A stretch of DNA of 20,310 nucleotides. Origin: Selaginella moellendorffii. Its lineage: Eukaryota > Plantae > Lycopodiophyta. Positions 1 through 9,215 of the stretch are shown piece after piece (position 1 is the first letter of the stretch; every line of letters begins with the position of its first letter). Where the stretch lies: assembly GCF_000143415.4 (NCBI RefSeq), contig NW_003314341.1, positions 1 to 20,310 of the forward strand. The letters are read 5' to 3'. Made by a program: the position numbers and the translations under genes. The notes under the pieces were generated by a model. It did no database searches. It had not been told where the DNA came from and saw nothing but the letters and a program-made list of their open reading frames with translations.

Positions 1-485
1 AAGTAATTAAGGGTGGGTGCGGATACTGAGCCTGGTCCACGCAACTTTCGTACGATCATCTACGTCTGCCGGTATGAAGTAGTCTCCATATCGTAGACCC
101 AGTCTTCCAAAACCTGATAGTCCCGCATGCCTCTGAAATTAGGCGGTTTCGGAGGCTTGAACTTTGAAACTCGTGCAACCGGGGGCGGCTGCAGAACTTC
201 ATCGTCCTCAGAACTCGAAGAGGAGTCCGGTTGCTTAGGCTTAGCTGGTTTAGCTGCCTCAGCTTCTTTCTTCCTCTTCTTGTTCTCCTTCTTCAATTTG
301 CGAATCTCCCTTCGCAAATTCTCGATTTCAACTTCCTGAGCCGTACGCTGCAATGCCGCAGCATCTGGCTCTTCCTCCTCTGACTCGGCCTCAGCCCCTT
401 CCGCAGCATCTCTAGCAGGAGTTTCCTCCTCTCGATTCGCCCGTCTAGAGGTTTCGGCGTCATCAGCACGGTTCCTCTTCACCAT
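1..485 (-). pseudogene. gag: 5' part of Ty3/gypsy gag of LTR element 1 (frameshifted near 83, runs off the window)
   Basis: ATG at 485 lies downstream of the PBS. The translation has an acidic/coiled-coil N-terminus, then KPPKPPNFRGMRDYQVLEDWVYDME, which resembles the chromoviral Gag motif (K.PEPK.F.G.R....LE.FLWDME.YF). A 1-nt shift after DME restores xYFIPADVDDRTKVAW. Confidence 0.8.
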
Positions 486-663
486 CCTACTAGCTGCATG
501 CATGCCTCTATCAGTAACTGAACATGCATACAACGTTCTTACCGAATGGTGCAATCCAACTAATCCTACACAGGTCGCTTCGGATCTACTAGAAAAGTCT
601 CTGCGTATGCAACTTGAGTCAGAAAATCCGACAAAAGTTGGATAGAAATCGCTAAGACAATTC

Positions 664-674
664 CTCTGATACCA
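664..674 (-). promoter_or_regulatory. Primer binding site for tRNA-iMet, element 1
   Basis: The reverse complement reads TGGTATCAGAG, 2 nt inside the LTR end (...GCGCTACA-TT-TGGTATCAGAG). Confidence 0.92.
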
Positions 675-676
675 AA

Positions 677-1595
677 TGTAGCGCACCTGAATTTGGAGCC
701 GAACTCCAAGCCCGTTGCGCTACGAAACGAGGGTCCGGTACAATCCCACGAGCACCAGCTCCCCGTATCCAGCACCTGCACGCAAAATGGTGTCAGACGG
801 AGTCTGGCACAATTTTGGCATACCGGTGGCCTAACGCGAGAAGGAGGGTACTCCACCGACTAGAGCAGCGTGGAGCTTGGGCTTAGACCCAAGCCGGACG
901 CAGAACAAGGAGCGACACAGCCCAGCGGGAGCCAAACTAATGTCTCAGGTGGTCGGACATGCATTCCAACCACTATCCCTACTATACATTTGGAACCCCC
1001 CACAGCCCCCCCCCCTTGAGGGACACACGCTTTGGGCTTTCACCCCAAGCCTCCCTTAGTACCAGGAGTTAGTCTCTGGGACAAGTCCGAAACTTACTAA
1101 ATATGGAATGTCCTTAGATTGCCAATTTGGACCTGGGATGAACACCATTGTGTTCAGACCGATCTCTACATTCCGTAGATATGCCAAATGAGCTAATCTA
1201 GACACCTTCCATAAATAGCATTCGGGACTGAAATGAGACCAACACAAAGGGCGTGATAGCGAGGGTGTTTGGCAGACACGGTAAGCTATCATCCGGCGAT
1301 ATTGAGGGACTAGTCTCAATACGCGAGGGTTCTTGCCAAGCCAGTGCAAGACAGAGCAAAAGAGAACTAACAAGCCGGGCCAAGTATGCTTGGCTAAATA
1401 GACACTTAGGAATTCCTTCCTTATGCTCATCCGGCCAAGTACAGATGCTAAGTCCAGTTTACTAACACTTGGACAAGAGGGGCCAATAAAGGGAACCAGC
1501 AGTACCGACCTCCTACCGTCATGGCAGTAAGGAAAGAGTGCCCGTAAGGACTGGTCGACAAGTATCTTTCGATACCCGAAGTCACATTCGCGACA
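677..1595 (-). mobile_element. 5' LTR of element 1 (919 bp)
   Basis: TG...CA termini with an imperfect inverted repeat (TGTAGCG...CGCGACA), adjacent to the PBS. Confidence 0.88.
971..1047 (-). promoter_or_regulatory. Copy of rDNA Pol I promoter inside element 1 LTR (putative +1 at 980)
   Basis: The reverse complement matches 11765-11840 except for about 3 substitutions and 1 indel. Confidence 0.8.
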
Positions 1596-2329
1596 CTAGA
1601 GCAGCGTGGAGCTTGGGCTTAGACCCAAGCCGGACGCAGAACAAGGAGCGACACAGCCCAGCGGGAGCCAAACTAATGTCTCAGGTGGTCGGACATGCAT
1701 TCCAACCACTATCCCTACTATACATTTGGAACCCCCCACAGCCCCCCCCCCCTTGAGGGACACACGCTTTGGGCTTTCACCCCAAGCCTCCCTTAGTACC
1801 AGGAGTTAGTCTCTGGGACAAGTCCGAAACTTACTAAATATGGAATGGCCTTAGATTGCGAATTTGGACACGGAACGAACACCATTGTGTTCAGGCCACT
1901 CTCTACGTTCTGTAGATATGCCAAATGAGCGAATCTAGACACTTTCCATAAATAGTATATGGGACTGAAATGAGACCAACACTAAGGGTATGATAGCGAG
2001 GGTGTTTGGCAGACACGGTAAGCTATCATCCAGCGATATTGAGGGACTAGTCTCAATATGCGAGGGTTCTTGCCAAGCCAGTGCAAGACAGAGCAAAAGA
2101 GAACTAAGAGCCAGGCCGAGAATGCTCAGCTAGAAACACATAGGAGTTCCTACCTTATGTTCATCTGGCTAAGTACAGATGCTAAGCCCAGTAAGCTAAC
2201 ACTTGGACAAGAGGGGCTATTGAAGGGAACCAGCAGTACCGACCTCCTGCCGTCGTGGCAGTAAGGAAAGAGTGCCCGTAAGGACTGGCCGACAAGTATC
2301 TTTCGATACCCGAAGTCACGTTTGCGACA
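1596..2329 (-). mobile_element. Second, partial copy of the element 1 LTR (equivalent to 860-1595)
   Basis: Direct repeat starting CTAGAGCAGCG and ending TTTGCGACA. It lacks the 183 bp PBS-proximal part. Confidence 0.9.
1707..1784 (-). promoter_or_regulatory. Copy of rDNA Pol I promoter inside the partial LTR (putative +1 at 1716)
   Basis: Same as 971-1047 with one more C in the homopolymer. Confidence 0.8.
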
Positions 2330-3347
2330 ATATAAGTGTATGGTCCTTAAATACTACTTACAATTGTCAATGTAAGGTGTGTTTGCCAAATTGTGTCATT
2401 AGTTAGTTATTAACTAGGATATTGTAAGCGACTAATTTTTCCATTCTACTTTAGTCACTTAACCACACCTCCGACCACTTGGAGGAGTCTCATTCACAAC
2501 CTCCATCAGTCCAATTCAGGACTTGGGACTTGCTAGCCCCAAGAATGGCATCCATGCCACTCCACACTTGCACCTGGTCCAAGTGCTCCACGTGTCCGGT
2601 CCTGAGACCGACACCCAAAGGTACCACTGACATCTCGGCCCGTTACGCTAAGGCCATGCCCATTCACCTTTGCTGCACTAGTGGTTCAACACCACTTGCA
2701 TCACCACCCCGTCTCTCCGAGACTGGGCCATGTGTCCACGAGTGGTCATCCTAGATCCACTCCTTAGCATCCTTAGGATGCCCACAGACCTGGGGAATTG
2801 CCTTCCCCAAAGTCCCTTTGTCAGTTCCTACCAAGTCCCTTTCTGCCCCTGGCCGTGTTTGCCAACACTACCACTGGATCGAGGCCCACAGGCCCGACCA
2901 CTAAGTCCCACGGTCCTCTGGGACTTCCTCACCACATGACTGTGTCCTTGGTCACTACCCCAGAGGACTGCTCCTCCTCCTTTCCACAGTCTGGGCCTTT
3001 GGGACAACATTTCGGAACACCGTGGCCTTACGCGAGCCACCTGGGTACTCTCCCCATCTATCGCCTTTAGGTGCTCTAGCCATGGGCTTAGAGCGAGGTT
3101 CCGTTGAGCCACGCCTGGTATCCAAGTAGGTAGTGCCACCCACACTTGGACTGGGAGCATCGGCCAGTCGATCTCCCGGGGGAACTAGAGCCGGCTCTTG
3201 AACACTTCACCAAGCTACCCCGCTTGTCGGTCCGTGTTCACTCTAGTCTTGGACTTCCCAGTGGGCAGCTCATCACCCAACACTGGGTCCGGCCTTCCTG
3301 GGCCAAACTGGCCTTTCCTGGCCAAACTGGCTCCACTGCAGTCCTCC

Positions 3348-3403
3348 CCCTACTATACTTTTGGGGCTCACCAAACCCCCCAGGGTCTGGGAGGCTTTCC
3401 CCT
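3348..3403 (-). promoter_or_regulatory. Pol I promoter-like motif in the 3' LTR of element 2, upstream element partly deleted
   Basis: The reverse complement contains CCAAAAGTATAGTAGGG, identical to 11818-11834. A 13-nt and a 1-nt deletion affect the upstream box relative to the 5' LTR. Confidence 0.65.
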
Positions 3404-3411
3404 CTCAGGCT

Positions 3412-3923
3412 CCGGACTCGGCCTCGGACTCGGACTCGGACTCGGACTCGGATTCGGACTCGGACTCAGGCTCGGGTTCGGGCTCGGTCTTGGCCTCGGC
3501 CTCGGTCTCGGTCTCGGTCCCGATCTCGGTCTCGGTCTCAGTCTCGGTCCCGGTCTCAGTTCCGGTCTCCGTCTCGACTTCGATCTCCATCTCGGGTCCA
3601 TCTCGGCGTCCATCTCGGACTCCATTTCGGGTCCATCTCGGGTCCACCTCGGACTCCATCTCGGACTCCATCTCGGACTCCATCTCGGAATCCATCTCGG
3701 ACTCCATCTCGGACTCCATCTCGGGTCCATCTCGGACTCCATCTCGGACTCCATTTCGGGTCCATCTCGGGTCCACCTCGGACTCCATCTCGGACTCCAT
3801 CTCGGACTCCATCTCGGGTCCATCTCGGACTCCAACTCGGGTTCATCTCGGGTCCACCTCGGACTCCATCTCGGACTCCATCTCGGACTCCATCTCGGGT
3901 CCATCTCGGACTCCATCTCGGAC
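3412..3923. repeat. GC-rich minisatellite in LTR U3: 6-mers (CGGACT/CGGTCT) then 11/12-mers (GGGTCCATCTC/GGACTCCATCTC)
   Basis: Directly visible tandem array. Confidence 0.97.
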
Positions 3924-4154
3924 ACTCCCACGTGTCATGTGTTGGTCCTTTTGGGTCCCTTTTTGGAGCCTTGCCTTTTGCTCGCTTCGTGCTCGTTCCT
4001 CGAGCACTTCGTTGGGAGTTCCACTCCCGCTCTTGACTTTTCAAGTCGGAGCTTTTGGTCCAAACGTGTTACGCTCGTTTGGCTCTCGCTTCGGCCACTA
4101 CCATGTGGCGCCCTTCCGGCTCCACTTTGGGGCCTAGGGATTTTGTGTCTCACA

Positions 4155-4195
4155 ACTCCACCACCCATAGACGAAGTTCGATGTCCTCATCGAAC
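4155..4195 (-). promoter_or_regulatory. Polypurine tract plus pre-PPT hairpin
   Basis: The minus strand reads GGGTGGTGGAGT immediately before the LTR TG. Hairpin GTTCGATG-AGGA-CATCGAAC (4176-4195) contains the GAGGAC motif typical of chromovirus 3' ends. Confidence 0.8.
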
Positions 4196-5630
4196 GGTAA
4201 ACCCTTTCATAAAGTAACACCCACATGTGTTACCATTTCCATCTTTGGCACCTAGCCAATCTTTGTCTATGGTTTGACATCAAAGGCTCACCATGCCTTG
4301 TCCATCCTTTAAGGAGCGTAGTCTCTCCAACTTAGAGATTGATTGGACCACATGTAATGGTTCTCCAATTTTATTGGTTTAGTTCTCGCTAAACCTCTTA
4401 GAGACCCTTCTCTAAGTCAATCCCACTACTCCTCCTTGAGTAGTCTCAATTTCCATTTATTGAATGTTTGCACCTTGGAACTTTCACTCTTTTGACTTTT
4501 TGGGAGTCAATTTCCTAGGTGTCTCCAACACCTTGCATTGCACAGATTGTGCAACTCCACTTCCCTATCCTAGGAAGTTCATTACTTGAGGGCACCATCA
4601 TCCTCTCTTCTATTTCGTGCCACCTTGGGCACTAAGTTCCATTTATCATACCTTGTGCTAGGGCTGTCCATGGCCCTATCATTTGGCTACCTTACCGCTC
4701 CCTCACTTGGAGCCTCTACTTCGCCAAATTGGAGCACTTAGGAATCCGTCCTTGAAAGTCTGCTTCCTTTCCCACAAGCTGTTAGCATCGAACACATTAG
4801 TGTTCCTTGGCTAACTTTGCCATTTGGATCCCTTCCATTAAATTCCATGGCCCAAACTTTGGCCACTAGTCCTTTGCTCCTATCCTTGATTGTTGCACCC
4901 AGCAACATCGGATCACTACCTCCATTTTTGAGGTATCCTTTCGGTTCCATAGCAAAGACTCTTCTTTGCCAAGTCCGGAGGATGTTCACCCCTAGTATGT
5001 CTCTTTAGCATATTCTGCTATGGGCTCTATCCATGGCCCAACTTCGTGACCCTCCCATGGGTCTTTTATAGAGACTACTTTCCTCGGACTCACTATGCCA
5101 TCGCACGGACATAGTTTATTTCCCTTAGGTGCTCTTCCCACTTGGTCATCGCGACCAAGCCACACCATCTTAAACAGTTCAATTTCAACATTTTGAACCA
5201 GGAACTTCATTCCTTAGCCAACCAAGGACCTTGTCCTTATCTAGCCATAAGATCACCTAGTGATCTCACCTTGGCACCTTAACAGAGTTGCCAAGAGGTA
5301 CTTGGTCTTCTAGACCTCCAAGTTGTTGACTATAACCCCGGGGGCATCCCCCACACTTGGCGGTGCACCCAAGCTAGCCCTTACGGCCAAGGGTTCATAG
5401 CAACTGAGATTAGGTGTCCCCATCTCACTCACCACGACCTTGGTGCCACTTGCACCAAAGTGTTCAAGTTAGATATGCTGAGTTTTCACACTAAGCAATC
5501 TAACCGTGCATCACGACTCTGAGGCATCCCTCGCTTGGCGGTGTGCCCAAACCAGTCTCCCCACTGAGAGTCCATGACCACCGAAATATGAGTGTCCTCA
5601 TATTCCAAACCATCACCACGCCCTAGTGAT

Positions 5631-5675
5631 TTGGGACTCGAACCCAAGCACTAGAGGGTCGGGACTCGAACCCAA
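5631..5675 (-). promoter_or_regulatory. Two tandem tRNA T-arm / Pol III B-box motifs
   Basis: The minus strand reads TTGGG-TTCGAGT-CCCGA and TTGGG-TTCGAGT-CCCAA: 5-bp stem, 7-nt loop, matching the consensus GGTTCGANTCC. Confidence 0.55.
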
Positions 5676-8198
5676 CCTCCGTATATGCATCTACGGACGG
5701 CATCACACTAGATGCCTGGCGTGACTCCCCACGCCGGTGCACCAACCTATTTTTAAAGCGCGCTACAGATCACAGCTTAGGAACCTAGTTCCTCCACACT
5801 GCCAAGTCCTCTCACTTGACATGTCTATGATCATGCATGGACTCCTCCATGCTCGGCCCCATGGCCCACCCTTTTTGAAGTTATCACCTTCAACTAGGGT
5901 CTTTGTTCCCCCGACGTGCCAATCTCACTTGGCAAGTTCTCCGACCATTGTAACATGGTTCCTGCATAAGCGTGAAAGTCCTTGACCATCGACTTTCGTT
6001 CAAAGCCCTCTCTTTGAACACTCGGGAACTACTTCCCTAACCTTGATAACCTTGCCTCATGGCAAGCTTCAAGACCACGCTTCTGCTGCGCCACTCTGAT
6101 TTCGCGCGTTCCATGAACCATTTACACTTGGCATTTCTAGGTACTACGCTACCTAGAATCGTCTTTGGGAACCTTGAAAGAACTCTGTCCCTCAACTTGC
6201 TAAGGCCTCCCCTTTCGCAAGCTTTATAGTTGCCATATAGTCTAACATGGACAATTCCATATTTTAGACCCTCTATGGCATCACGGTTGCTAGCAACAAC
6301 ATCCTCGAGCACCCTTTTGATTCTCCACTCCCAGCTGTCATAACCAACCTTGGTTATGCCCTTTGATTCCTATGGTTCGGTTCTATCCCCTTCTTGCTTT
6401 TTGGCTTCACACCTTTCCTTTGGTCATTCTCCTCCAGACCAGGAGGATAGCTTTGCACTTTCTATCATGCCTTAGCAAGTATTCTTAGGGATGAACCTAC
6501 CCAATAGCCTAGGGAGTGGTTCCTCAATCCGGGTATGCTCACCCTATAATCCAACACGCTGGGATTACATTGTTGCTTATGGGCCTTTACATGCCCATCA
6601 CTAGCCTTGCCAAAATTCCATTTTTGGCTTTGTCCAACTCGGGTAGACAGTCCTCTCCTGTCTCCGCAACCTTGGACATTTGGATAGCACCTTCTATCCA
6701 CCATTCGCTAGGGACTTAGTCCCTTGGGCTTTATCCATTGCCCTCGCGACATCAAACACCACCTTCTGGTGTTCTAGAGTGTTCGGGTGTCCCAATGATG
6801 GCTTTCTTGACAATGAGTATTTCCTTTTATGACATTGACTTACTATATCGCAACATAAGCAACTTATCCCCCGTAAGGGTATATCCGACTTCCCTATACT
6901 AGAAGTCTTGGGTAGCTACCTTCTACCCGTTTAACCAGTTATTTTGCACCTCTTGCTTAGTTGCCTCATGGTTGTCAAGTTCTACAACTCATTGCTTGGT
7001 GCTTGCACACCTCCATCACTATCTGGGTCACCACACTCCAACTGCATGCTCTGCAGCTTAGGCTATGCCATTCCCATTTCCATTGGGATTCCTTTGGCAA
7101 GGGGTTCTCATGAACCCACCAACATAGCCTCAAGGTATCACACCTTGGCACATTTGGTGTCTCCACACCATCGGCTCCACGAGCCTACCTGTATGACATT
7201 TCCCTTCGTGTCTAAGTCTTTGCCAAGACCAACACCGCTCTTTCTCATGCCAACCGTCTGTTAGCACTGCCCCATAGAGGTCACACACAACTTTATGTCA
7301 AAGTTGTTTTCTTCTGGGAACACCTTTCCCATAACTTTAGCATGGCACATTTTGCCATCGATGAGATACTCTCTGTTCTCATCCTTGGATCCTATGATCC
7401 CCCCCCCATCCTTTGTGGGGTACAACGCACCTCAGTCCAAATGCTTCATTCAGTCCTTTTAGGACCATTCGTTGACTCTACTTGAGTCATCCAGCAGTTT
7501 TGGACTTGGTTAATCCAGAGACCCGTAAGGTCCTACTTGTGAGGCACTAGTTCACTAGAATACACTTTTTGCATTCCTGTCCTACTCAAAAGGACTATTT
7601 TCACAAGTGTTACTCCGACACTTGATTTTGTTCTCTAGGGGCAACCTTTGCCCCTTAGGACTACTTGTCCATGTGATGAGAACACCAACTCATCCACTTA
7701 ATACACCCCCAACTCCTTGGGTTGTTCCAGCATTTATTAGAGGTAGCCCCGGCCACCATTTCAAGGACTTGAGTCCTCTTCCGTATTTGACCTTCCACGG
7801 TCATTACCTTTGGTCTCACATTCATGAGCACCAACCTCAACTATATGAGGATAATCTTGTGACTCCTTTATTGTTTTGGAGTCTCTATCTTTCCCGTGAT
7901 CCCAACTTTAGTTGTTTACCACAACAACCTAAGCCAATTTGCTGAGACAAATGCTCATCCGGATCACATCCTCAACTCAATGAGGAAAACCTTGCACTGT
8001 TCCCAAGATCCCAAAGTCGTTCCATTATTGGCCCTTTTCTATCCACCACCTCGTCTACAAGTTCACACATGAACTGTAATGGAGAGCCATGTCTTCCAGA
8101 CTTGCTACTCCTCAAGGATAGGCCCACTCCTCGGACCTTCCGATGCCAACACTAGTGGTGATATACTTGAGCACCAATAAAAGTCGGACTAAGGAACA

Positions 8199-8210
8199 GC
8201 TCCGATACCA
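8199..8210 (-). promoter_or_regulatory. Primer binding site for tRNA-iMet, element 2
   Basis: The reverse complement is TGGTATCGGAGC (one change from TGGTATCAGAGC), 3 nt inside the LTR end. Confidence 0.9.
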
Positions 8211-9137
8211 AGTTGTAAGAGACTAATTTTTCCATTCTACTTTAGTCACTTAACCACACCTCCGACCACTTGGAGGAGTCTCATTCACAACCTCCATCAG
8301 TCCAATTCAGGACTTGGGACTTGCTAGCCCCCAGAATGGCATCCATGCCACTCCACACTTGCACCTGGTCCAAGTGCTCCACGTGTCCGGTCCTGAGACC
8401 GACACCCAAAGGTACCACTGACATCTCGGCCCGTTACGCTAAGGCCATGCCCATTCACCTTTGCTGCACTAGTGGTTCAACACCACTTGCATCACCACCT
8501 CGTCTCTCCAAGACTAGGTCATGTGTCCACGAGTGGTCATCCTAGATCCACTCCTTAGCATCCTTAGGATGCCCACAGACCTGGGGAATTGCCTTCCCCA
8601 AAGTCCCTTTGTCAGTTCCTACCAAGTCCCTTTCTGCCCCTGGCCGTGTTTGCCAACACTGCCACTGGATCGAGGCCCACAGGCCCGACCACTAAGTCCC
8701 ACGGTCCTCTGGGACTTCCTCACCACATGACTGTGTCCTTGGTCACCACCCCAGAGGACTGCTCCTCTTCCTTTCCACAGTCTGGGCCTTTGGGACAACA
8801 TTTTGGAACACCGTGGCCTTACGCGAGCCACCTGGGTACTCTCCCCGCCTTTCGCCTTTAGGTGCTCTAGCCATGGGCTTAGAGCGGGTTCCGTTGAGCC
8901 ACGCCTGGTATCCAAGTAGGTAGTGCCACCCACACTTGGACTGGGAGCATCGGCCAGTCGATCTCCCGGGGGAACTAGAGCCGGCTCTTGAACACTTCAC
9001 CAAGCTACCCCGCTTGTCGGTCCGTGTTCACTCTAGTCTTGGACTTCCCAGTGGGCAGCTCATCACCCAACACGCGGTCCGGCCTTCCTGGCCCAAACTG
9101 GCCTTTCCTGGCCAAACTGGCTCCACTGCATGCCTCC

Positions 9138-9206
9138 CCCTACTATACTTTTGGAGCTCACCAAACCCCCCAGCGTCTGGGAGACGAACGCTTAGGGCTT
9201 TCACCC
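9138..9206 (-). promoter_or_regulatory. Pol I promoter-like bipartite motif in the 5' LTR of element 2 (putative +1 at 9141)
   Basis: The reverse complement reads GGGTGAAAGCCCTAAGCGTTCGTCTCCCAG...TCCAAAAGTATAGTAGGG. Both boxes match 11767-11834, with 55 versus 54 nt spacing. Confidence 0.75.
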
Positions 9207-9215
9207 TCTCAGGCT

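What the first reader, a model, noticed from the sequence alone, without database searches (positions are those of the whole stretch)
971..1047. Element 1 LTR holds a sharply bounded, ~95% identical copy of the gene promoter (about -66 to +10)
The reverse complement of 971-1047 differs from 11765-11840 only at CTCCCA/CCCTCAA and one A/T, and includes the G10 and G6 runs. Similarity stops abruptly on both sides. Pol I promoters evolve fast and are species-specific, so near identity implies recent capture, ongoing conversion or tracking selection. The boundaries resemble the minimal plant Pol I promoter size, so the element effectively delimits the functional promoter.
Basis: partly seen in the sequence, partly recalled or inferred. 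Interest (0 to 1): 0.8.

Follow-up and report, generated by a model that had tools for sequence, protein, structure and literature searches.

The report
rRNA promoter copy in retrotransposon LTR
A very common jumping gene of the spikemoss Selaginella carries, at the spot in its end repeat where its own RNA should start, a 95%-identical copy of the start signal of the plant's large ribosomal RNA genes; the copy is old, present in all eight family copies examined and unusually well kept, but which RNA polymerase reads it is still unknown.

Summary
The reverse complement of 971-1047 matches 11765-11840 (-66..+10 of the presumed rRNA gene start, A11831) at 73 of 77 positions (E 9e-28). A second copy lies at 1707-1784.

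- **Boundaries.** Homology does not end at -66. It runs about 34 nt further upstream at 61-64% identity. Only the +10 edge is sharp.
- **Age.** The block is not a recent or local capture. It lies in the LTR of an autonomous Ty3/gypsy chromovirus family that is very abundant in the genome.
- **Conversion.** Six copies on a non-rDNA Selaginella moellendorffii scaffold carry the same block. They share the two small departures from the gene promoter, so ongoing conversion by the rDNA is unlikely.
- **Conservation.** The 111-nt spacer-derived segment is the least variable stretch of the LTR in eight copies. It sits 304 nt from the LTR end, where an LTR promoter and start site are expected.

It most likely serves as the element's core promoter. 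The polymerase is unresolved, because two RNA runs gave no reads and had no control.

Cassandra (5S/Pol III) and Pokey (spacer repeats) are the nearest known cases. I found no published Pol I case. This scan has already noted the same phenomenon on other DNA of this genome.

The parts
971..1047 (-). Core promoter copy A in the Element 1 LTR (equivalent of -66..+10; +1 equivalent at 980)
   Evidence: 73/77 identical to 11765-11840, E 8.7e-28
1048..1081 (-). Weaker continuation of the spacer homology (equivalent of about -100..-67)
   Evidence: nhmmer LTR profile aligns to 11730-11840. 20/33 ungapped matches, best of 7,444 registers
1707..1784 (-). Core promoter copy B, in the tandem duplicate of the LTR (+1 equivalent at 1716)
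   Evidence: 93.6% to 11765-11840. It differs from copy A only by one extra G
677..1595 (-). Canonical 5' LTR of Element 1 (919 nt, TGTCGC...CTACA). U3 is about 615 nt and R+U5 304 nt if RNA starts at 980
   Evidence: Termini read. The 5' terminus is confirmed by polypurine tracts next to it in other copies (loose end at 1597)
1596..2329 (-). Tandem duplicate of the first ~734 nt of the LTR
   Evidence: 859-1598 against 1595-2332 at 93%
663..674 (-). Primer-binding site TGGTATCAGAGG, 2 nt after the LTR
   Evidence: Read. The match to the initiator tRNA-Met 3' end is from general knowledge
1..485 (-). gag fragment of Element 1, with a frameshift or stop near 60; runs off the window
   Evidence: Family members encode gag-PR-RT-RNaseH-INT-chromodomain
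11765..11840 (+). Presumed Pol I gene promoter core (-66..+10), with TATAGTAGGG at 11825-11834 and +1 at A11831
   Evidence: 2,050 nt upstream of the 18S gene. Matches the plant start motif (PMC6589552). The same sequence with both flanks is in a public contig from another run
11731..11764 (+). Spacer stretch that matches the LTR at 61-64%
20079..20147 (+). Native spacer promoter-like copy in the 241-nt repeats downstream of 26S (another near 19838-19906)
   Evidence: 74% to the gene promoter (family D17). The alignment spans -88..+38 and further
9138..9206 (-). Promoter-like block in the 5' LTR of Element 2; the 3' LTR mate at 3348-3406 is partly deleted
   Evidence: 82.6% to 11767-11834
2423..10121 (-). 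Element 2: a non-coding LTR element with an ATATC target duplication
   Evidence: LTRs 10121->8214 and 4154->2423, primer-binding site 8210-8199, polypurine tract 4166-4156

Best explanation
The 77-nt block is the high-identity core of a roughly 111-nt piece of rDNA spacer, about -100..+10 around the rRNA gene start.

**What it belongs to.** The piece is an inherited part of the LTR of a very abundant, autonomous Ty3/gypsy chromovirus of Selaginella moellendorffii. It was taken from the gene promoter, or a close paralogue, before the family diversified. It was then carried to many sites, including this rDNA spacer, where the element sits antisense to the rRNA gene.

**What it does (inferred).** The block sits 304 nt from the 3' end of the LTR, at the expected U3/R boundary. 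It is the least variable part of the LTR. It therefore most likely acts as the element's own core promoter and start site.

**Which polymerase (not shown).** The family encodes gag-pol, which must be translated. I therefore favour reading by Pol II through the TATA-like start motif, with Pol I use possible alongside.

**Why identity is high.** Both copies have been held still since the capture. The core is 95% identical and the upstream flank 61-64%. Local conversion does not explain this.
For: - **Identity and position.** LTR anatomy and the position of the block come.
- **Family type.** A family member on locus L001 encodes gag, protease, RT, RNase H, integrase and chromodomain.
- **Abundance.** 27,911 contig pieces of one DNA run lie on 1-1598. 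The block bins are as deep as the neighbouring bins.
- **Spread beyond rDNA.** Six copies lie on a non-rDNA scaffold with PPR genes. All carry the block and the same two departures from the gene promoter.
- **Conservation.** Diversity in 971-1081 is 0.044 against an LTR median of 0.130, rank 1 of 801 windows. It stays lowest without CpG/CHG columns.
- **Identity step.** Core 73/77 against flank 20/33, Fisher p = 2e-5.
- **The spacer as source.**
  - Spacer repeats share -88..+38 with the gene promoter.
  - The start motif is the plant Pol I type.
  - The otherwise unalignable LTR of Element 2 also carries the block.
Against: - No RNA evidence. Two RNA-seq runs laid no read at all and there was no positive control.
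- The rRNA gene start itself is inferred from a motif and is not mapped.
- The conservation test rests on eight copies from two loci.
- A mutational cold spot cannot be fully excluded.
- R and U5 limits are unknown, so 'at the U3/R boundary' is a plausibility argument.
- No LTR homology to the region downstream of 26S was found apart from the block. This says nothing about Pol II, but it does not help a Pol I reading.
Confidence: 0.6

Rival explanations
1. The block recruits RNA polymerase I. The element's genomic RNA is made by Pol I, a Pol I counterpart of Cassandra. Proteins are supplied by rarer Pol II transcripts or by other copies.
For: - The core covers -66..+10 of the gene promoter with only three substitutions and one indel.
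- Its size resembles the Arabidopsis minimal Pol I promoter (general knowledge).
- Two otherwise unalignable LTRs in the window keep the same block.
- Several elements sit in rDNA spacers (notes, untested).
Against: - The family is autonomous and needs a translatable mRNA.
- Copies lie outside the rDNA.
- No Pol I terminator-region homology was found in the LTR.
- There are no RNA data.
Confidence: 0.2
2. The block is a neutral passenger. A spacer fragment was picked up once and spread by hitch-hiking in a successful family. Its likeness to the gene promoter reflects only young age and a slowly changing host promoter.
For: - The block is family-wide with fixed differences, so one capture suffices.
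- The partly deleted copy in one Element 2 LTR shows that single copies decay.
Against: - The segment is the least variable of 801 LTR windows, also without methylatable columns.
- It sits where an LTR promoter is expected.
- A second LTR with no other detectable similarity keeps the same boxes.
Confidence: 0.12
3. Ongoing gene conversion or repeated recapture from the rDNA promoter keeps the LTR copies, at least the rDNA-resident ones, up to date.
For: - There is a sharp step in identity at -66 and at +10.
- Pokey elements show exchange of this kind with the spacer (PMC3849761).
Against: - The rDNA-resident copy carries the family states (CCCTCAA, AAATG), not the gene states (CTCCCA, AAAAG).
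- So do all six dispersed copies.
- An independent contig of the gene promoter keeps the gene states.
Confidence: 0.05
4. The direction is reversed. The rDNA 'promoter' block is a remnant of an LTR that was inserted into the spacer.
For: The family is far more abundant than the rDNA, so it is a plentiful donor.
Against: - Only about 111 nt of the 919-nt LTR match the spacer.
- Diverged native spacer repeats share the promoter and its downstream flank to +38.
- The start motif is the land-plant Pol I type.
- A second, otherwise unalignable LTR also shares only this block.
- The same promoter context stands in an independent contig.
Confidence: 0.04

Closest known systems
Cassandra TRIM retrotransposons, with a 5S rDNA-derived Pol III promoter in the LTRs (PMC10853983, PMC7215508)
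   Same: An LTR element carries a conserved piece of a host ribosomal RNA gene with its promoter inside the LTR. The piece stays close to the host version.
   Different: - Here the piece is the upstream Pol I core promoter of the 45S unit. It is not an internal Pol III promoter inside a 5S-like sequence.
- The carrier family is a long autonomous chromovirus, not a miniature non-coding element.
- No co-evolution across species has been tested.
Helenus and Ajax ('TRIMp3'): LTR elements with tRNA- or 5S-derived LTR parts (PMC10886601)
   Same: A host RNA-gene promoter module is built into an LTR.
   Different: - Those are Pol III modules in non-autonomous TRIMs.
- Rfam finds no tRNA or 5S in 1-2400 of this window.
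Pokey piggyBac transposons of Daphnia, with rDNA spacer-derived repeats upstream of the transposase (PMC3849761)
   Same: A mobile element carries spacer-derived sequence that stays very similar to the rDNA. Its members live both inside and outside the rDNA.
   Different: - Pokey is a DNA transposon.
- Its 200-nt repeats are not shown to be the promoter.
- They appear to exchange with the rDNA regularly. Here the fixed family-specific differences argue against current exchange.
Spacer promoters, that is promoter duplications within plant rDNA spacers (PMC6589552)
   Same: They are duplicated copies of the gene promoter with the start motif. Such native copies exist in this window at about 19838 and 20079.
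   Different: The block at 971-1047 is not a spacer repeat. It is inverted and lies inside an LTR that is followed by a primer-binding site and gag. The LTR also occurs on a non-rDNA scaffold.

Membership tests
LTR retrotransposon, Ty3/gypsy chromovirus | LTR with TG...CA termini, followed by a tRNA primer-binding site | tested here: met
   TGTCGC at 1595 (and 2329), CTACA ending at 677, TGGTATCAGAGG at 674-663
LTR retrotransposon, Ty3/gypsy chromovirus | gag and pol in the order PR-RT-RNaseH-INT, with a chromodomain at the integrase end | tested here: met
   Family member on L001. ORF 17183-20836(-) hits Retrotrans_gag, RVP_2, RVT_1, RT_RNaseH and Integrase_H2C2. ORF 14265-15314(-) hits rve, SH3_Tf2-1 and Chromo. 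The window itself holds only a gag fragment with a frameshift
LTR retrotransposon, Ty3/gypsy chromovirus | Second LTR, polypurine tract and target-site duplication of this very copy | not testable with these tools
   The 3' part of Element 1 lies beyond the window's left end. Polypurine tracts next to the LTR start are seen in other copies
Functional plant Pol I promoter | Start motif of the TATATAGGGG type | tested here: met
   TATAGTAGGG in the gene promoter and in all eight LTR copies. Motif as in PMC6589552
Functional plant Pol I promoter | Initiation by Pol I mapped at the motif | tested here: inconclusive
   Two RNA-seq runs laid 0 reads on 1-1598, without a positive control. No polymerase-specific data are on hand
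Cassandra / TRIMp3 | 5S- or tRNA-derived sequence with an internal Pol III promoter in the LTR | tested here: not met
   Rfam gathering search finds only 18S, 5.8S and 26S in the window and nothing in 1-2400
Cassandra / TRIMp3 | Short non-autonomous element without coding capacity | tested here: not met
   Element 1 has gag, and its family has full gag-pol
Native rDNA spacer promoter repeat | Lies in the spacer in gene orientation, and its flanks are homologous to the gene promoter's flanks | tested here: not met
   The block is inverted and lies inside an LTR. Only about 34 nt of weak upstream flank homology exist. The true spacer copies at 19838 and 20079 do meet the feature

The most novel reading that the evidence does not exclude
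A high-copy autonomous chromovirus, and at least one other LTR family with no other detectable LTR similarity in the same genome, uses the host's Pol I core promoter as its LTR promoter. It is transcribed, at least for its genomic RNA, by RNA polymerase I. That would be the first Pol I-driven LTR retrotransposon and a natural marker of the lycophyte Pol I core promoter.
Probability: 0.15. Interest if true: 0.85.

Novelty: new variant of a known kind. Interest (0 to 1): 0.6.

Why it matters
LTR elements that borrow host RNA-gene promoters are known only for Pol III (Cassandra, Helenus, Ajax). A well-kept Pol I core promoter at the start-site position of an abundant, protein-coding LTR family would be a new kind of promoter borrowing.

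- It raises a testable question: can a plant Pol I core promoter serve Pol II, or both polymerases?
- It gives a natural experiment for mapping the working limits of a lycophyte Pol I promoter, which has not been mapped. The evidence is the identity step at -66/+10 and the block that the two LTR families share.
- It bears on rDNA biology. Thousands of dispersed promoter copies could bind Pol I factors, and copies inside spacers point antisense to the genes.

Tried and rejected
- **RNA evidence.** The two raw-read RNA-seq runs offered (X22, X23) laid no read on 1-1598 and had no positive control. Nothing can be said about expression.
- **Flank homology with stringent scoring.** Local scoring of +2/-3 gave nothing above shuffles. 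Only the LTR profile and the anchored register test showed the upstream continuation. A downstream continuation is only hinted at in the older subfamily: GTAGGTCGGG against GGAGGTCGGG, chosen after the fact, with shuffle p of 0.004-0.08. I do not claim it.
- **More family copies through proteins.**
  - The gag fragment found one chimeric gene model, which gave L001.
  - The 1,217-aa gag-pol found only distant relatives, at most 38% identity.
- **More rDNA units.** Exact look-ups of four spurious ORFs in the promoter/ETS region and at the 26S 3' end found nothing. A homology search with one of them gave one public contig.
- **Literature.** Six searches found no report of a Pol I promoter in an LTR, nor of the Selaginella spacer.

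Full report
**Setting.** The window holds a plant-type 45S rDNA unit: 18S at 13881-15690, 5.8S at 16012-16165 and 26S at 16338-19726. The motif TATAGTAGGG lies at 11825-11834, 2,050 nt upstream of 18S. It is of the plant Pol I start type TATATAGGGG (PMC6589552). I take A11831 as +1. This is an inference, because no start site was mapped. Earlier scan notes name the organism as a spikemoss. My own searches tie the repeats to Selaginella moellendorffii.

**The observation.**
- Self-BLAST gives 971-1047 against 11840-11765 at 94.8%, E 8.7e-28.
- The alignment shows 73 matches, three substitutions and one 1-nt indel. These are confined to the CTCCCA/CCCTCAA patch and an A/T at -8.
- A second copy at 1707-1784 differs from the first by one extra G.

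**Anatomy of Element 1 (minus strand).**
- The LTR starts with TGTCGC at 1595 and ends with CTACA at 677. That makes 919 nt.
- TGGTATCAGAGG at 674-663 follows 2 nt after the LTR. It is a primer-binding site of the initiator tRNA-Met type (general knowledge).
- A gag-like frame follows from 485 downwards and is broken by a frameshift near 60.
- The first ~734 nt of the LTR are duplicated in tandem (2329->1596, 93% identity). This is why there are two promoter copies.
- The +1 equivalent is 980. That leaves about 615 nt upstream (U3) and 304 nt downstream (R+U5), which is where an LTR promoter and start site are expected. This placement is an inference.

**The family.**
- The gag fragment led to a non-rDNA locus. 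L001 is GL377592.1:552085-584700, on a 1.97-Mb scaffold with PPR/DYW genes.
- L001 holds six LTR copies, 74-95% identical to the window's LTR.
- Its ORFs carry gag, protease, RT, RNase H, integrase zinc domain, integrase core, SH3 and chromodomain. The family is therefore an autonomous Ty3/gypsy chromovirus.
- In one DNA run, 27,911 contig pieces lie on 1-1598.
  - The LTR part is several-fold deeper than the gag part.
  - The block bins are as deep as their neighbours.
  - The loose end at 1597 reads as a polypurine tract, which confirms the LTR terminus.
- The family is thus very abundant and not confined to the rDNA.

**Is the block local or family-wide?** All eight LTR copies carry the block: two in the window and six in L001, in two subfamilies. 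Each matches 70-73 of the 76 gene bases. All share the same two departures from the gene promoter: C(C/T)CTCAA instead of CTCCCA, and AAATG instead of AAAAG. A public contig from another run (L002, 1,290 nt) matches 11170-12459 at 99.5%. It shows the gene-type states with both spacer flanks and differs only in having G11 for G10. That run may come from the sample that was assembled. The block was therefore inherited from the family ancestor. A recent capture by this copy and ongoing conversion by the rDNA are both unlikely.

**How far does the homology go?**
- Stringent local scoring of the flanks gave nothing.
- A profile of the eight LTRs aligns to 11730-11840 with high posterior support, E 3e-25.
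- The 33 nt just upstream of the core match 20/33 (this copy) or 21/33 (older subfamily) without gaps in the collinear register. That is the best of 7,444 registers in the spacer.
- The step from 73/77 to 20/33 is significant, Fisher p = 2e-5.
- Downstream of +10 there is no reliable homology in this copy. The older subfamily gives only a hint.
- Many family copies diverge or carry deletions exactly at 970/971.
- The captured piece was therefore at least about 111 nt, and -66 is a step in identity rather than a capture edge.

**Direction of transfer.**
- The 241-nt repeats downstream of 26S hold diverged promoter-like copies (19838, 20079). The clearer one aligns with the gene promoter from -88 to at least +38, with score 41.5 against 13.2 +/- 1.9 for shuffles. 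The promoter sequence is thus old in the spacer.
- Only 111 of the 919 LTR bases match the spacer.
- The neighbouring Element 2 is a non-coding LTR element at 2423-10121 with an ATATC target duplication, a primer-binding site and a polypurine tract.
  - It has no other detectable LTR similarity to Element 1, yet carries the block.
  - The block is 57/69 to the gene and 55/70 to Element 1.
  - It shares GTGAGC with the spacer copies where the gene and Element 1 have the G6 run.
- The spacer is the common source, so spacer to LTR is the likelier direction.

**Conservation.**

| LTR region (window coordinates) | Mean pairwise difference, eight copies |
|---|---|
| Core block, 971-1047 | 0.045 |
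| Upstream flank of the block, 1048-1081 | 0.039 |
| Rest of U3 | 0.09-0.14 |
| Downstream of the block, 911-970 | 0.22 |
| U5 | 0.28 |

- The 111-nt segment is the least diverse of 801 windows, 0.044 against a median of 0.130. Variable columns number 13/111, against 167/513 in the rest of U3 (p = 5e-6).
- The segment stays lowest when CpG and CHG columns are left out, 0.033 against 0.102 and 0.211.
- This is the result expected if replicating lineages need the segment. The sample is small, two loci.

**Mechanism.**
- Shown: the block is a family-wide, spacer-derived and best-kept LTR segment at the expected start-site position.
- Inferred: it is the element's core promoter.
- Unresolved: the polymerase.
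- The family must make translatable gag-pol mRNA. I found no LTR homology to the region downstream of 26S apart from the block.
- I therefore lean towards Pol II reading a TATA-like Pol I start motif. Pol I use remains a live minority reading.
- The RNA runs gave no reads and no control.

**Comparison with known systems.**
- Cassandra, and Helenus and Ajax, carry Pol III promoters of 5S or tRNA origin in the LTRs of miniature non-coding elements (PMC10853983, PMC10886601).
- Pokey carries spacer repeats that evolve in concert with the rDNA (PMC3849761).
- This case works like them in borrowing a host rRNA-gene control region. It is not a member of any of them: there is no Pol III module, the family is autonomous, and the fixed differences argue against current exchange.
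- I found no published Pol I case.
- This scan has already reported the phenomenon several times on other DNA of the same genome.
- This report adds five points for Element 1:
  - its identity as a chromovirus;
  - its presence outside the rDNA;
  - the shared departures from the gene promoter;
  - the extension of homology to about -100;
  - the conservation ranking.

Noticed in passing
window 1596-2329 and 859-1595: The first ~734 nt of the Element 1 LTR are duplicated head to tail (93% identity), with a TAGT microhomology at the junction. This gives two promoter copies 736 nt apart in one LTR.
   Followed up: partly
window 973-1350 (read laying): In two DNA runs the block plus the ~300 nt upstream of it is deeper than the rest of the LTR and far deeper than gag (X4: 165-447 against 9). 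This part may be shared with other families, solo LTRs or tandem arrays.
   Followed up: no
window 895-970: Many family copies diverge or carry ~75-nt deletions that end exactly at 970/971, the +10 edge of the block (joints 893/894->970/971; loose ends at 911 and 970).
   Followed up: partly
window 9210-9304 and 3417-3475 against 11862-11918: (GAGTCC)n-like repeats lie just upstream of the block in Element 2's LTR. They resemble repeats at +32..+88 of the 5' ETS (76-80%). The order is permuted relative to the rDNA, which could mean capture from a tandem promoter array, or only a shared microsatellite.
   Followed up: no
window 2423-10121: Element 2 is a 7.7-kb LTR element with no ORF longer than 112 aa inside. 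It has an ATATC target duplication and LTRs of 1,908 and 1,732 nt at about 92% identity. One LTR's promoter block has lost about 27 nt.
   Followed up: partly
window 10222-11226: The spacer subrepeats upstream of the promoter carry CACGTG-containing units (62-, 16- and 39-45-nt periods). The 16-nt array forms long imperfect palindromes.
   Followed up: no
L002:596-672 against window 11765-11840: The long G run of the gene promoter is G11 in a public contig and G10 in the window. In LTR copies it ranges from about G8 to G23, so the homopolymer is unstable.
   Followed up: partly
L001:8893-21908: A nested cluster of Element 1-family copies lies next to PPR/DYW genes. A public gene model (P0001) fuses a gag piece to a DYW deaminase domain across 12.6 kb and looks like an annotation chimera.
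   Followed up: no
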